64,000 nucleotides of DNA from Pavona decussata. Lineage: Eukaryota. The DNA is taken from contig CDRNST010000273.1 of the NCBI GenBank assembly GCA_977016875.1, forward strand, positions 3,100,001-3,164,000, written 5' to 3'. Positions 34,247-36,156 of the stretch are shown one piece after another. Below the pieces are notes generated by a model. That model had not been told where the DNA came from. It was given only the letters and a program-made list of their open reading frames with translations, and ran no database searches. A program made the position numbers and the translations under genes. Position 1 is the stretch's first letter, and the number at the start of each line of letters is the position of its first letter.

Positions 34247-34510
34247 CAACCAGTTGCAAAAATAGTGAGACACTCCAACCAAAAATCGCCCTTTACCACT
34301 TCAAATTGCTGCCGCTCATAAATCTGTGAGACATGACAGTACCCCCCTCCCTCCCCTCCATACAAAGTTGTTCCTCCAAATTTTGAGCGTCATCTTGCAT
34401 TGCTAACAACATTTATAAGGGGGGGAGGGGGAATGGAAAGCACGTGATCACGGCAACTTCATTTAAGGCCAAATATGTTACAGTGTCTCAAGTCTTTTTG
34501 CAACTAGTTG
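34247..34510 (+). repeat. Left terminal direct repeat
   Basis: CAACCAGTTGCAAAAATAGTGAGACAC ... GTGTCTCAAGTCTTTTTGCAACTAGTTG. Confidence 0.95.
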
Positions 34511-35008
34511 TCTGAGTTAGGGGTGAACATCCAGGCCCTTTTCTCGGATGTGGAGGAACGTACAAATGATGTTGACCTAAATTTGGAAAATGCAACATCT
34601 ATTTAGTACATCACTGGACATTTTAGGGTTCTAATTGGGGTGGAAGTGTGTGACTGAGGGAAAACAATGTCACACTATTTGGTTATGTCACGTCGAGAAT
34701 GCGTGACTTTTGCAAGATCACAATAAAACCAAAACACTTGCACTAATGTCATTTGTAGTCAATCCTAAATAGTTATAAATGGCCAACGATAAAATACAGT
34801 CAGGGGTGAAAGCATTCCATGTGTTATGTATCATTTTATGACGGTCTACCATCACAACACGGTCTACCATCACTACAGTAAGAAATATGATATGTTATCT
34901 ATTTTTAAGTCATTCGCTATGGTAGACCGTGTAGACCGTCACTGCAAAATTCGAGCCTACTTAGCAAACAGTTCACTTTAGGAAATTTAAGTCCAAAAGA
35001 CTTTTCAA

Positions 35009-35245
35009 TCACCGCAACACAAACGTGGCAAAGCATTTAGAGCACTTTGGGATCTCCTTTTGAACATCCTGCTGTATCTGTACATTGAAATGAAAGATCT
35101 TCCACCTAACAGACATCATGTCCGTCTCCCGCTGATCGATAACAACGTTTTTAATATAAACGAAAGGCTGTTTCCCCGTACAAGAAATAGGAGTGTCTTT
35201 TTCAAAAACAATGTCCCTGGCATAATGCGTTTTAGGCGCAGAGAG
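35009..35245 (-). pseudogene. C-terminal fragment of a putative Rep/NS1-like SF3 helicase protein
   Basis: LSAPKTHYARDIVFEKDTPISCTGK...DQRETDMMSVRWKIFHFNVQI..KEIPKCSKCFA resembles the motif B'/C and arginine-finger region plus terminal CxxC of HUH-Rep/SF3 proteins that I recall from marine invertebrate genomes. Walker A/B are absent. Confidence 0.55.
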
Positions 35246-35892
35246 TAGCAAATAACCATGTAAGTGGCAAACTCGCGTTCGCCGCACTTTAATTTACGAA
35301 CGTGTAAGTTTCACCTGTCGTAATTGCAATGCAAACACGTCCTGAAAAATGTAACTAGCTTAAAGCAATTTGCTGAAATAAGCGTGTATCACAATGTATA
35401 TTCACAAAGGTCTAATTTTCAAGACTCATTTCTAAGCAACTGGTTTTCCCCTTAAAACGGCACGCGATCACAATAGAACGTGTGTTTATGTCCCTAACAA
35501 GAACGTCAACAAACGCTTATCTCCGAAATCTAATGACGGTTTTGGCGCAACCTATGCACGTAAATAAACTTGTTTGACGTTAATGCTCAGTAAATAACTT
35601 TGAATCACGTCCTTACAGACCGCACAAGCGAAAATGGCCTTATATCTCTTTTTTTTTCCAAACTTAGGCATATTTTCTGACTTGCTAACTGAAAACAATG
35701 AAAATTGTGGCTATGACGTCATTCCAAAAATAACCCAAAATTACCTTTCTTCCTCTGCCATTTGTAATCCATGAAACATCCACCAATAAAACCCAATTTT
35801 GCCAAAACCCCTCACAAATAGCCAAACGTGGACCACTTCCCAAAGCGATCCATAAACTAACAGAATGCTCATACAGCGTCAAAGCGCTCAGA

Positions 35893-36156
35893 CAACCAGT
35901 TGCAAAAATAGTGAGACACTCCAACCAAAAATCGCCCTTTACCACTTCAAATTGCTGCCGCTCATAAATCTGTGAGACATGACAGTACCCCCCTCCCTCC
36001 CCTCCATACAAAGTTGTTCCTCCAAATTTTGAGCGTCATCTTGCATTGCTAACAACATTGATAAGGGGGGGAGGGGGAATGGAAAGCACGTGATCACGGC
36101 AACTTCATTTAAGGCCAAATATGTTACAGTGTCTCAAGTCTTTTTGCAACTAGTTG
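35893..36156 (+). repeat. Right terminal direct repeat
   Basis: 263 of 264 bases identical to the left repeat (CATTTATA vs CATTGATA). Confidence 0.95.

What the first reader, a model, noticed from the sequence alone, without database searches (positions are those of the whole stretch)
34247..36156. Composite, LTR-like element: TIR-bounded 264-bp direct repeats around a Rep/SF3-helicase-like gene remnant
Seen: two 264-bp repeats in direct orientation differ at one base. Each is itself bounded by CAAC.AGTTGCAAAAA..TGAGACAC inverted repeats and holds a C-rich/G-rich internal stem-loop. TA lies only outside the pair, while the inner junctions (GTTG|TCTGAG and CTCAGA|CAAC) mirror each other. The 1.9-kb block therefore looks like one recent insertion, not two MITE hits. 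If the true ends are ACAAC...GTTGT, it inserted into T^A with no TSD. The 1382-bp core has one coding relic, which I recognise as the C-terminus of an HUH-Rep/SF3-helicase-like protein. Known: long terminal direct repeats built from TIR pairs are described for KolobokP (DDE + HNH, TTAA target); HUH transposons are Helitrons and Replitrons. Inference: this may be an internally deleted member of an undescribed family coupling a ssDNA-virus-like Rep to composite terminal repeats, possibly excising as a circle and leaving solo repeats that are catalogued as MITEs.
Basis: partly seen in the sequence, partly recalled or inferred. Interest (0 to 1): 0.85.

Follow-up and report, generated by a model that had tools for sequence, protein, structure and literature searches.

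The report
Tc1-type transposon family carrying viral Rep
The 1.9-kb block is a gutted, non-autonomous copy of a coral and sea-anemone transposon family that encodes both a Tc1-type cut-and-paste transposase and a virus-type rolling-circle Rep/helicase, sits between two foldback direct repeats, and piles up into tandem arrays, a combination I did not find described.

Summary
Two 266-bp direct repeats (U) with one mismatch, each bounded by inverted repeats, flank a 1380-bp core.

The core holds the last 76 codons of a 497-aa HUH-Rep/SF3-helicase. That element carries, between the two U, a DD34E Tc1-type transposase and the Rep, in convergent orientation.

- **One unit.** The same U-core-U variant lies at other loci with other flanks.
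- **Target.** An empty-site allele in a public run reads CTAG; the occupied site reads TTA[element]TAG.
- **Excision.** Two array junctions without U keep ACATGT and ACTGT, which are Tc1-type footprints.
- **Census.** About 22 loci of this family are solo U, monomers, or arrays of up to 20 or more periods.
- **Breadth.** Six lineages about 50% diverged, plus a seventh in a sea anemone with a partial Rep match, keep the Rep, transposase and U layout. The U hairpin top is invariant where U was found.

Mobility by the DDE transposase is well supported. A role for Rep in nicking the U hairpin and multiplying units is inference. The closest known architecture is KolobokP.

I found no description of a Tc1 + Rep element in the searchable literature. 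Other first readers of this scan flagged the same hybrid on other pieces of this genome.

The parts
34245..34246 (.). Left copy of the TA target duplication. The flank reads cgtTA; the family consensus is CTA.
   Evidence: Outer flanks of 11 loci read mostly CT|ACAAC...GTTGT|AG. The empty allele in run X18 reads tacgCtagcttg.
34247..34510 (+). Left U, the long terminal direct repeat (264 bp). It has tips CAAC...GTTG, 17-nt TIRs, a subterminal GTGAGACA motif, and a central C-rich/G-rich hairpin whose top is CAAAGTTG...CAACATT. It carries a private T at 34414.
   Evidence: It is 99.2-100% identical to genomic copies.
34512..34648 (+). 137 bp kept next to U in every variant. In full-length copies the transposase gene follows here; in this copy it is deleted at 34648/34649.
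   Evidence: BLAST of the core against the loci breaks at core position 137/138, where L031 carries an extra 1231 bp with the transposase ORFs. Contigs in three runs diverge at 34648/34649.
34649..35008 (.). Spacer between the 3' ends of the two genes. It includes an 18-bp tandem duplication (34841-34876) and a 14-nt perfect inverted repeat (34857-34870 / 34919-34932).
   Evidence: It corresponds to L031 2135-2494.
35009..35239 (-). Rep relic: the last 76 codons plus the stop codon of the 497-aa HUH-Rep/SF3 helicase.
   Evidence: tblastn finds 90.6% identity to residues 413-497. The ORF is listed. The deletion junction lies at core position 728, which is window 35239.
35240..35891 (-). The first 7 Rep codons (ATG at 35259, reading MVICYSL) and about 630 bp of Rep upstream region. 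This stretch is kept in all deletion derivatives and contains a TGACGTCA palindrome at 35714-35721.
   Evidence: I9. It corresponds to L031 3968-4621.
35893..36156 (+). Right U (264 bp), in direct orientation. At the one variable site it is identical to most genomic copies.
36157..36158 (.). Right copy of the TA target duplication (TAgc).

Best explanation
**What it is.** Window 34247-36156 is a non-autonomous 'monomer' (U-core-U) of a composite-like DNA transposon family of hexacorals. Complete members are about 3.7-4.1 kb. They have a 240-280-bp foldback unit U at each end, in direct orientation. Between the U units lie a Tc1-type DD34E transposase gene and an HUH-Rep/SF3-helicase gene. The two genes point toward each other, and each has its upstream region next to a U. 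The window copy has lost the whole transposase gene and Rep codons 8-420.

**Shown.** The family inserts at TA inside C-TA-G. It moves as a unit bounded by the outermost U tips. Single U units are cut out leaving 2 nt of each tip, as Tc1 and Tc3 do. Solo U, monomers and (U-core)n-U arrays coexist. Arrays grew stepwise in place.

**Inferred.** The transposase binds the lineage-specific TIRs of U and does all cutting and pasting.

**Inferred, with less certainty (about 0.4-0.5).** Rep nicks the invariant hairpin in the middle of U. It thereby multiplies U-core units. This could happen by provoking misaligned repair or replication between neighbouring U (the 'induced unequal crossover' proposed for KolobokP). 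It could also happen by replicative release of U+core circles from between two direct U. The window copy would depend on both enzymes being supplied by other copies.
For: **Anatomy and deletion series**
- Every core variant (periods 1646, 2041, 2531, 2920 bp) aligns to the 4121-bp form with breaks at core positions 137/138 and 728.
- The 4121-bp form has a 497-aa Rep ORF and a transposase frame. The transposase frame is open for about 360 aa in most copies.

**Transposase**
- Pfam DDE_3 matches at 9e-15. Relatives also match HTH_Tnp_Tc3_2.
- D159, D256 and E291, with 34 residues between the last two, are invariant in six lineages.

**Rep**
- Invariant motifs are YLxTYS, HxH, YxxK, the Walker A GxxNxxK and Walker B LND.
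- Parvo_NS1, PPV_E1_C and REP_ORF2-G2P reach Pfam cut-offs in family members.
- The AlphaFold model matches AAV2 Rep68 (E 2.6e-6), the papillomavirus E1 helicase, and CRESS Rep nuclease domains with TM 0.6-0.73.

**Target site**
- Outer flanks are CT|A...T|AG at most loci.
- The empty allele has a single CTAG.

**Excision**
- U-less junctions read CTCAG-ACATGT-CTGAG and CTCAG-ACTGT-CTGAG.

**Moves as a unit**
- The same 1646/1647-bp variant occurs as monomers at C43, C19 and C13, and as an array of at least 12 periods at C363.

**Census**
- There are 19 exact outer-left junctions plus 3 near matches, against 68 inner junctions.

**Arrays grew in place**
- In C192, 14 periods show 16 variable columns out of 2532, shared by subsets of periods. 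In C154, 20 periods show 11 SNP columns shared by neighbouring periods.

**The layout is old and kept**
- Rep + transposase recur in six lineages about 50% diverged: F1, F2 at C114 (at least 19 periods), L050, L052/L053, L054 and L055. U was found in five of them. The layout also recurs in the sea anemone Actinostola, where the Rep match is partial.
- TIR pairs co-vary, while the hairpin top CAATGTTG/CAACATTG is nearly invariant.
Against: - No experiment or read evidence here shows that Rep acts on U, or that circles exist.
- The hairpin loop has no recognisable nonanucleotide.
- The helicase core of the model (residues 373-433) is of low confidence.
- Sequence searches of the PDB were blank.
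- In one lineage (L054) I did not find a U-like hairpin.
- TA duplication and insertion into T^A without duplication give identical letters.
- The footprints fit a 2-nt cut at CAAC ends or a 3-nt cut at ACAAC ends equally well.
- Array growth by ordinary unequal crossover needs no Rep.
- Co-divergence of the two genes could not be shown. The lineages are star-like (Mantel r = -0.30).
Confidence: 0.78

Rival explanations
1. Rep is passive cargo: an endogenised ssDNA-virus gene picked up once by a Tc1 element. On this reading the element is an ordinary cut-and-paste transposon, and arrays and solo U arise only by unaided unequal crossover between the direct U units.
For: - Mobility signatures are all of the DDE type.
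- Variant patterns within arrays fit stepwise duplication in place.
- LTR elements and KolobokP also give solos and multimers through recombination (PMC9587614).
Against: - Rep ORFs are intact, with all catalytic motifs invariant, in at least six lineages about 50% diverged. They keep the same position and orientation relative to the transposase and, where U was found, to U.
- More than 543 Rep proteins and more than 774 transposase proteins of the matching clades were found, often on the same contigs.
- The hairpin in U is conserved much better than the TIRs, which a transposase alone does not explain.
- Arrays make up about a third of loci, and reach 20 or more periods.
Confidence: 0.14
2. 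One reading: an HUH transposon (Helitron/Replitron-like) in which Rep itself excises and inserts the element through a single-stranded circle, at T^A, with no target duplication.
For: - A Rep relic lies inside the element, and intact Rep genes lie in full-length copies.
- 'No TSD at T^A' cannot be told apart from a TA duplication by the letters alone.
- C-U-C junctions, compatible with circles or with arrays, occur in runs of other organisms.
Against: - The target is palindromic (CTAG) and both ends are symmetric, whereas HUH transposons have asymmetric ends and one conserved flank.
- A DD34E transposase is co-encoded in every lineage.
- U excision leaves 2 nt of each tip, a staggered double-strand cut.
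- Rep here is Y1 + SF3, not the Y2 + SF1B of Helitrons, and Replitron transposases lack a helicase (PMC10288648).
Confidence: 0.05
3. Two independent insertions of a 264-bp MITE that happen to flank an unrelated Rep pseudogene fragment.
For: Solo U copies with TA flanks do exist (C99).
Against: - The inner junctions are GA/TC, not TA. They are identical in all 68 inner junctions genome-wide.
- The identical U-core-U recurs at other loci with other flanks.
- The empty allele lacks the whole 1.9 kb in one step.
Confidence: 0.01

Closest known systems
KolobokP composite-like DNA transposons (Kojima & Bao 2022, Mob DNA 13:24, PMC9587614)
   Same: - LTDR-INT-LTDR layout, with each long terminal direct repeat carrying its own short TIRs.
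- Solo LTDRs, (LTDR-INT)n-LTDR multimers and LTDR-(INT)n-LTDR forms.
- LTDR excision with footprints.
- A DDE transposase plus a second, site-specific nuclease, proposed to drive multimerisation.
   Different: - Superfamily: Kolobok, against Tc1/mariner DD34E here.
- TSD: 3-5 bp in KolobokP, TA here.
- LTDR length: about 450 or 660 bp in KolobokP, 240-280 bp here.
[quoted passage not shown]
- The seven host phyla listed for KolobokP do not include Cnidaria.
- Here U also carries a deeply conserved central hairpin.
Tc1/mariner DD34E transposons (Tc1, Tc3, Sleeping Beauty)
   Same: - HTH + DDE_3 transposase with DD34E spacing.
- TIRs and a TA target.
- Excision footprints that keep 2-3 nt of each end. 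(The footprint rule is from my own knowledge of Tc3 and SB biochemistry.)
   Different: - Classical members are 1.3-2.4 kb with one gene and simple inverted ends.
- Here both ends are complete foldback units in direct orientation, a second gene (Rep) is kept, and tandem arrays are common.
Rep proteins of CRESS-DNA viruses and parvoviruses (AAV2 Rep68, PCV2 and geminivirus Rep)
   Same: - HUH nuclease fold plus SF3 helicase, with HxH, YxxK and Walker A/B motifs.
- The gene diverges from its neighbour across an intergenic region that holds a conserved hairpin.
   Different: - No capsid gene was found. In L031 I listed no other ORF of 70 aa or more apart from overlaps of the two genes, and small conserved ORFs gave no Pfam match.
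- No relative was found in IMG/VR.
- The neighbouring gene is a DDE transposase.
- Only chromosomal copies were seen.
Geminivirus-like transposon of Tuber melanosporum (Liu et al. 2011, PMC3198968)
   Same: A Rep-like ORF and transposase ORFs lie together between TIRs, and the element was read as an ssDNA-virus-derived transposon.
   Different: - That element is fungal and was described from a reconstructed consensus with interrupted ORFs.
- It has 37-bp TIRs and no evident TSD.
- No direct terminal repeats or arrays were reported for it.
Helitrons and Replitrons (eukaryotic HUH transposons)
   Same: They are eukaryotic mobile elements that encode a Rep-class HUH endonuclease.
   Different: - Helitrons have Y2 Rep + SF1B helicase, 5'-TC...CTRR-3' ends, insert at A^T, and have no TIRs.
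- Replitrons have Y1 Rep without a helicase and short direct terminal repeats.
- Neither carries a DDE transposase.

Membership tests
Tc1/mariner superfamily (DD34E Tc1 group) | Transposase with N-terminal HTH domains and a DDE_3 catalytic domain, with 34 residues between the second D and the E. | tested here: met
   DDE_3 matches at 9e-15 and there are HTH hits. HTH_Tnp_Tc3_2 matches in relatives. D159, D256 and E291 are invariant, with spacing 34. The gene is absent from the window copy itself.
Tc1/mariner superfamily (DD34E Tc1 group) | Insertion at TA with duplication of the TA. | tested here: inconclusive
   The empty allele has CTAG and the occupied site has TTA...TAG. Outer flanks at 11 loci are mostly CTA...TAG. 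The letters fit a TA duplication, but equally an insertion into T^A of an element one base longer at each end.
Tc1/mariner superfamily (DD34E Tc1 group) | Excision footprint that keeps a few terminal nucleotides of both ends. | tested here: met
   The footprints ACATGT and ACTGT lie at two U-less junctions.
Tc1/mariner superfamily (DD34E Tc1 group) | Simple structure: one gene between a single pair of inverted ends. | tested here: not met
   There are two genes, and both ends are complete foldback units in direct orientation.
KolobokP | LTDR-INT-LTDR with TIR-bounded LTDRs, solo LTDRs and multimers. | tested here: met
   An LTDR-(INT)n-LTDR form occurs in Actinostola.
KolobokP | [quoted passage not shown] | tested here: not met
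   The transposase is DDE_3/Tc1-type and the second protein is HUH + SF3.
CRESS-DNA virus / parvovirus | Rep with HUH and catalytic Tyr motifs, fused to an SF3 helicase. | tested here: met
   The window keeps only the last 76 codons.
CRESS-DNA virus / parvovirus | A capsid gene and an encapsidated episomal genome. | tested here: not met
   No further sizeable ORF or Pfam hit was found in full-length units. No relative was found in IMG/VR. The existence of an episome could not be tested with these tools.
Helitron | RepHel (Y2 Rep + SF1B helicase), 5'-TC...CTRR-3' ends, A^T insertion, no TIRs. | tested here: not met
   The Rep has one YxxK tyrosine motif and an SF3 helicase. TIRs are present and the target is CTAG.
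Replitron | Y1 Rep transposase without a helicase, short direct terminal repeats, no DDE enzyme (PMC10288648). | tested here: not met
   An SF3 helicase is fused to the Rep and a DDE transposase is co-encoded. The terminal repeats are 264 bp and bounded by TIRs.
LTR retrotransposon / TRIM | TG...CA LTR ends, PBS and PPT, 4-6-bp TSD, reverse transcriptase in autonomous members. | tested here: not met
   The ends are CAAC...GTTG. The flanks are TA at most. The autonomous form encodes a DDE transposase and a Rep, with no RT.

The most novel reading that the evidence does not exclude
The family is a true replicon-transposon hybrid. On this reading the integrated U-core-U form is a terminally redundant 'provirus'. 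Rep starts at the hairpin of one U and terminates at the next, releasing and amplifying unit-length U+core circles by rolling-circle replication, as geminivirus Rep releases genomes from partial tandem repeats. The DD34E transposase then cuts U-bounded monomers or multimers out of the replicated DNA and pastes them into TA sites. That would be a copy-and-paste cycle built from a cut-and-paste enzyme, with the transposase standing where a capsid gene stands in CRESS-DNA viruses.
Probability: 0.3. Interest if true: 0.92.

Novelty: new variant of a known kind. Interest (0 to 1): 0.78.

Why it matters
Cut-and-paste transposons have a standing copy-number problem, and rolling-circle replicons have an integration problem. 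An element that keeps both a Tc1 transposase and a viral-type Rep/helicase through deep divergence across stony corals and sea anemones suggests that the two enzymes solve each other's problem.

- It would be a second, independent case after KolobokP of a DDE transposon with long terminal direct repeats and a second site-specific nuclease. That would point to a general strategy rather than a curiosity.
- It gives a concrete, testable link between ssDNA-virus Reps and eukaryotic transposons.
- It explains a class of coral 'MITEs' (solo U) and kilobase-period satellites that fill many unplaced contigs.
- Practically, Rep-like hits in cnidarian genomes and coral metagenomes may be misread as endogenous or free ssDNA viruses when they belong to this transposon family.

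Tried and rejected
- **PDB sequence searches.** Searches with the Rep and with its 22-sequence profile found nothing meaningful. Only the fold comparison worked.
- **Co-divergence test.** Testing Rep against transposase over six lineages gave a Mantel r of -0.30, with 615 of 720 permutations at least as high. The lineages are star-like, so the test has no power.
- **IMG/VR scan.** A scan with the Rep profile found no relative.
- **Nested Tc1 insertion.** I looked for separate TIRs around the transposase segment of the 4.1-kb form, to test whether it is a nested Tc1 insertion. There are none, so the idea is rejected.
- **One-shot concatemer integration.** Variants are shared by subsets of periods, so this is rejected as the sole origin of arrays.
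- **Two independent MITE insertions, and an LTR-type retroelement.** Both rejected; see the rival explanations and the membership test.
- **P0054 (Acropora millepora) look-up.** It returned no record.
- **L054.** A U-like hairpin was not found in this lineage.
- **A larger fetch of family-2/3 loci.** Only L049 and L056 were added afterwards.
- **Depth in Logan contigs.** I did not use it as a copy number or as evidence of episomes.
- **Literature.** Ten searches found no description of a Tc1 + Rep element with direct terminal repeats. Repbase Reports and subscription journals are outside the library.
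Full report
**1. Observation**

The two repeats are real. They lie at 34246-34511 and 35892-36157, are 266 bp long, and start 1646 bp apart. 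The single difference is T at 34414 against G at 36060.

Each unit, which I call U, has these features:
- 17-nt terminal inverted repeats.
- A subterminal GAGACAC motif on both arms.
- A C-rich/G-rich hairpin in the middle.

As single-stranded DNA it folds into one long foldback, with z = -4.15 against shuffles. TA occurs only at the two outer junctions. The inner junctions read CTCAG|ACAAC and GTTGT|CTGAG.

**2. The core is a deletion derivative of a two-gene element**

A search of the window's own assembly found U at many places, often at regular spacings. The spacings are 4121 bp (C246), 2531 bp (C192), 2041 bp (C154), 2920 bp (C176) and about 1657 bp (C72).

BLAST of the window core against the fetched loci shows that every variant is the same sequence with different internal losses. 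The breaks are always at core positions 137/138 and 728.

The 4121-bp form (L031 501-4887) carries two genes between two U units:
- On the + strand, a Tc1-like transposase frame: an HTH ORF and a 246-aa DDE ORF in one frame. This copy has one stop. Most copies are open for about 360 aa.
- On the - strand, a 497-aa ORF with Rep and helicase motifs.

The transposase segment has no inverted repeats of its own, so it is not a nested insertion.

The window copy keeps the following parts:
- 137 bp next to the left U.
- The spacer between the two genes' 3' ends.
- The last 76 Rep codons (35009-35239, minus strand; 90.6% identity over the aligned 85 aa).
- The first 7 Rep codons.
- About 630 bp upstream of Rep.

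**3. The proteins**

*Transposase.* Pfam DDE_3 matches at 9e-15. Relatives also hit HTH_Tnp_Tc3_2. D159, D256 and E291 are invariant in six lineages, with 34 residues between the last two. This is a DD34E enzyme of the Tc1 type.

*Rep.*
- A 22-sequence alignment (A1) has invariant YLxTYS, HxH (H106, H108), YxxK (Y149, K152), Walker A and Walker B.
- Family members reach Pfam thresholds for Parvo_NS1, PPV_E1_C and REP_ORF2-G2P.
- The AlphaFold model has mean pLDDT 69. The nuclease and oligomerisation parts score about 90, and the helicase core is poor.
- The model matches AAV2 Rep68 over its whole length (E 2.6e-6) and the papillomavirus E1 helicase. Its N-terminal domain matches CRESS-DNA Rep nuclease domains at TM 0.6-0.73 and rmsd 3-4 Å.
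- PDB searches by sequence were blank.

**4. How it moves**

*Target.* Outer flanks at 11 loci read mostly CT|ACAAC...GTTGT|AG.

*Empty site.* In run X18 a contig at single-copy depth joins 34243 to 36157 with one C between. This gives tacgCTAGcttg, an allele without the whole 1.9 kb and with one TA inside CTAG. The occupied allele reads cgTTA[CAAC...GTTG]TAGct. So the block is one insertion, and its target is the family's consensus.

*TA duplication or not.* The letters cannot separate 'TA duplicated' from 'inserted into T^A'. With a DD34E enzyme I take the former.

*Excision.* Two junctions inside arrays lack U and read CTCAG-ACATGT-CTGAG (C154) and CTCAG-ACTGT-CTGAG (C246). These keep two nucleotides of each U tip, minus one in the second case. 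From my own knowledge of Tc3 and Sleeping Beauty biochemistry, this is the kind of footprint that staggered cuts of Tc1-family transposases leave.

*Moves as a unit.* The window's own 1646/1647-bp variant is also present as monomers at C43, C19 and C13 with different flanks. It forms an array of at least 12 periods at C363. U-core-U therefore transposes as a unit.

**5. Census and arrays**

Exact-pattern counts give 19 outer-left junctions (TA|CAAC) plus 3 near matches, and 68 inner junctions (GA|CAAC). The reversed-pattern control gives 0. By position these are roughly:
- 6-8 solo U.
- About 9 monomers.
- About 7 arrays, reaching 15 U in C192 and at least 21 U in C154.

Arrays begin and end with a complete U and carry the TA/CTAG flanks.

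Within arrays the periods are more than 99% alike, but the few variants are shared by subsets of periods. In C192 there are 16 variable columns out of 2532, and two period types are interleaved. In C154 there are 11 SNP columns shared by neighbouring periods. This fits repeated duplication in place. It does not fit a single integration of a uniform concatemer.

For these two counts I joined overlapping fetched loci of the assembly, which are non-autonomous copies. All proteins used are translations of natural copies.

**6. The layout is old**

In the same genome, family F2 forms arrays of at least 19 periods of 3691 bp at C114. A second set of arrays, with a 3690-bp period, lies at C241. In both, Rep and transposase are about 50% identical to F1. 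In the F2 array fetched (C114) there is also a U analogue, and the first U abuts CTA.

The many 2868-bp arrays on small contigs are Rep-deleted derivatives of F2. This parallels the window copy.

Outside this genome, Rep and transposase lie convergent in several places:
- A Tara scaffold (L050).
- Long-read metagenome contigs made of 3-4 periods (L052-L055).
- The sea anemone Actinostola (L051, partial Rep match, residues 151-496). There, two identical 273-bp U units bound three gene-pair periods, and the flanks again fit CTA...TAG.

A U analogue was found in L050, L052/L053, L055 and L051, but not in L054.

The Rep family has more than 543 proteins and the transposase clade more than 774. Named members come from Acropora, Porites and Actinostola. 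In at least seven Rep-transposase pairs the two proteins list the same longest-contig length, which suggests a shared contig. Two of these pairs (P0094 and P0052) were confirmed on one contig.

Across six U sequences:
- The TIR pairs change in step. 23 of 52 predicted pairs show compensatory change.
- The hairpin top CAATGTTG/CAACATTG and its C/G-rich stem hardly change.
- Inner flanks avoid TA. G precedes the tip in 5 of 6 lineages and C follows it in 4 of 6.

From my own knowledge that Sleeping Beauty needs flanking TA for efficient excision, I infer that this biases cutting to the outermost tips. I did not test that inference.

**7. Mechanism**

*Shown.* The family is a DDE-type, TA-targeting mobile unit bounded by U tips. 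U can be excised alone. Multimers grow in place.

*Inferred.* Rep, a site-specific nickase with a helicase, acts on the invariant hairpin of U. Two routes are open.
- The first is the model proposed for KolobokP: a nick in one U during replication is repaired on a neighbouring U, which adds a period (PMC9587614).
- The second is replicative release of U+core circles from between two direct U, followed by rolling-circle amplification and re-insertion by the transposase.

The direct orientation of U, the position of U between the two divergent upstream regions, and the prevalence of arrays fit both routes. The array variant patterns show that the first kind of process happens. Nothing here shows circles.

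Several metagenome array contigs have record names ending in '_c'. In some long-read assemblers, as I recall, this marks contigs called circular. Their lengths are not whole multiples of the period (14,921 bp against 4 x 3697 bp), and tandem arrays can produce such calls, so I give this no weight.

**8. Comparison with what is known**

- The closest architecture is KolobokP. It belongs to a different superfamily, has a different TSD, and has a different second enzyme.
- Liu et al. 2011 reported a Rep-like ORF with transposase ORFs between TIRs in Tuber, and integrated NS1-like elements in Hydra.
- The Replitron paper does not mention Tc1 or DDE enzymes.
- Ten full-text searches found no description of a Tc1-type element with a Rep/SF3 gene and long terminal direct repeats. 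Repbase Reports and subscription journals were not searchable.
- Other first-stage readers of this scan flagged the same hybrid on other pieces of this genome, and none was followed up.

**9. Verdict**

It is wrong or incomplete about the engine of mobility, which is a Tc1-type transposase.

The window copy itself is a dead passenger. The family it belongs to is an undescribed variant of composite-like DNA transposons. There is a realistic chance, about 0.3, that it is a genuine replicon-transposon hybrid.

Noticed in passing
L052:5523-7062: In one metagenome array contig, the apex of the U hairpin (CAATGTTG, loop, CAACATTG) has expanded into a 54-bp tandem repeat of 29 copies. Gene callers read it as a 534-aa ORF. 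A second such block lies at about 10650-11800.
   Followed up: partly
L052, L053, L054, L055 (record names): Four long-read metagenome contigs made only of 3-4 Rep+transposase periods have names ending in '_c' and coverage of 2-3x. The suffix may be an assembler's 'circular' flag. Their lengths are not whole multiples of the period, so a tandem-array artefact is likely.
   Followed up: no
L051:5185-18436: The sea-anemone (Actinostola) copy has U only at the two ends, and three Rep+transposase periods abut without U. One junction reads GAGAC|ATGTATAC. This is like the LTDR-(INT)n-LTDR forms of KolobokP. The outer-left tip has a C-to-G change.
   Followed up: partly
window 33600-34240: The left flank of the insertion is itself high-copy. 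Logan contig depths there run from hundreds to about 12,000, against about 27 on the right flank. The element therefore landed in or beside another repeat, which I did not identify.
   Followed up: no
L044:5157-5519 and 6814-7176 (G000 C72): In the array with a period of about 1657 bp, a 363-bp piece of the core (positions 138-500) lies in the opposite orientation to the rest of each period. This is an internal inversion propagated through the array.
   Followed up: no
G000 C246:56556 to beyond 126610: The 4121-bp array runs for at least 70 kb with irregular stretches. The first three periods carry Rep with stops and a frame break, later periods have open Rep frames, and one junction has lost its U (footprint ACTGT at 116106).
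   Followed up: partly
window 35714-35721; L053 about 2163; L054 about 2075; L050 about 85: A TGACGTCA-type palindrome (CRE-like) recurs in the gene-upstream regions next to U in several lineages. It is a candidate promoter element or protein-binding site.
   Followed up: no
runs X19 and X1: Runs labelled as other organisms (G and A) hold the window's core variant at about 99-100% identity and the core-U-core junction, but not the window's flanks. I did not determine whether these are close relatives, or whether the element was shared recently between species.
   Followed up: no
G000 small contigs C297, C592, C387, C212, C538, C159, C499, C532 and others: Many short contigs consist entirely of arrays with periods of 2856-2873 bp. 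The one period I examined (C297) is a Rep-deleted derivative of family F2. This is a kilobase-period 'satellite' that probably limits the assembly.
   Followed up: partly
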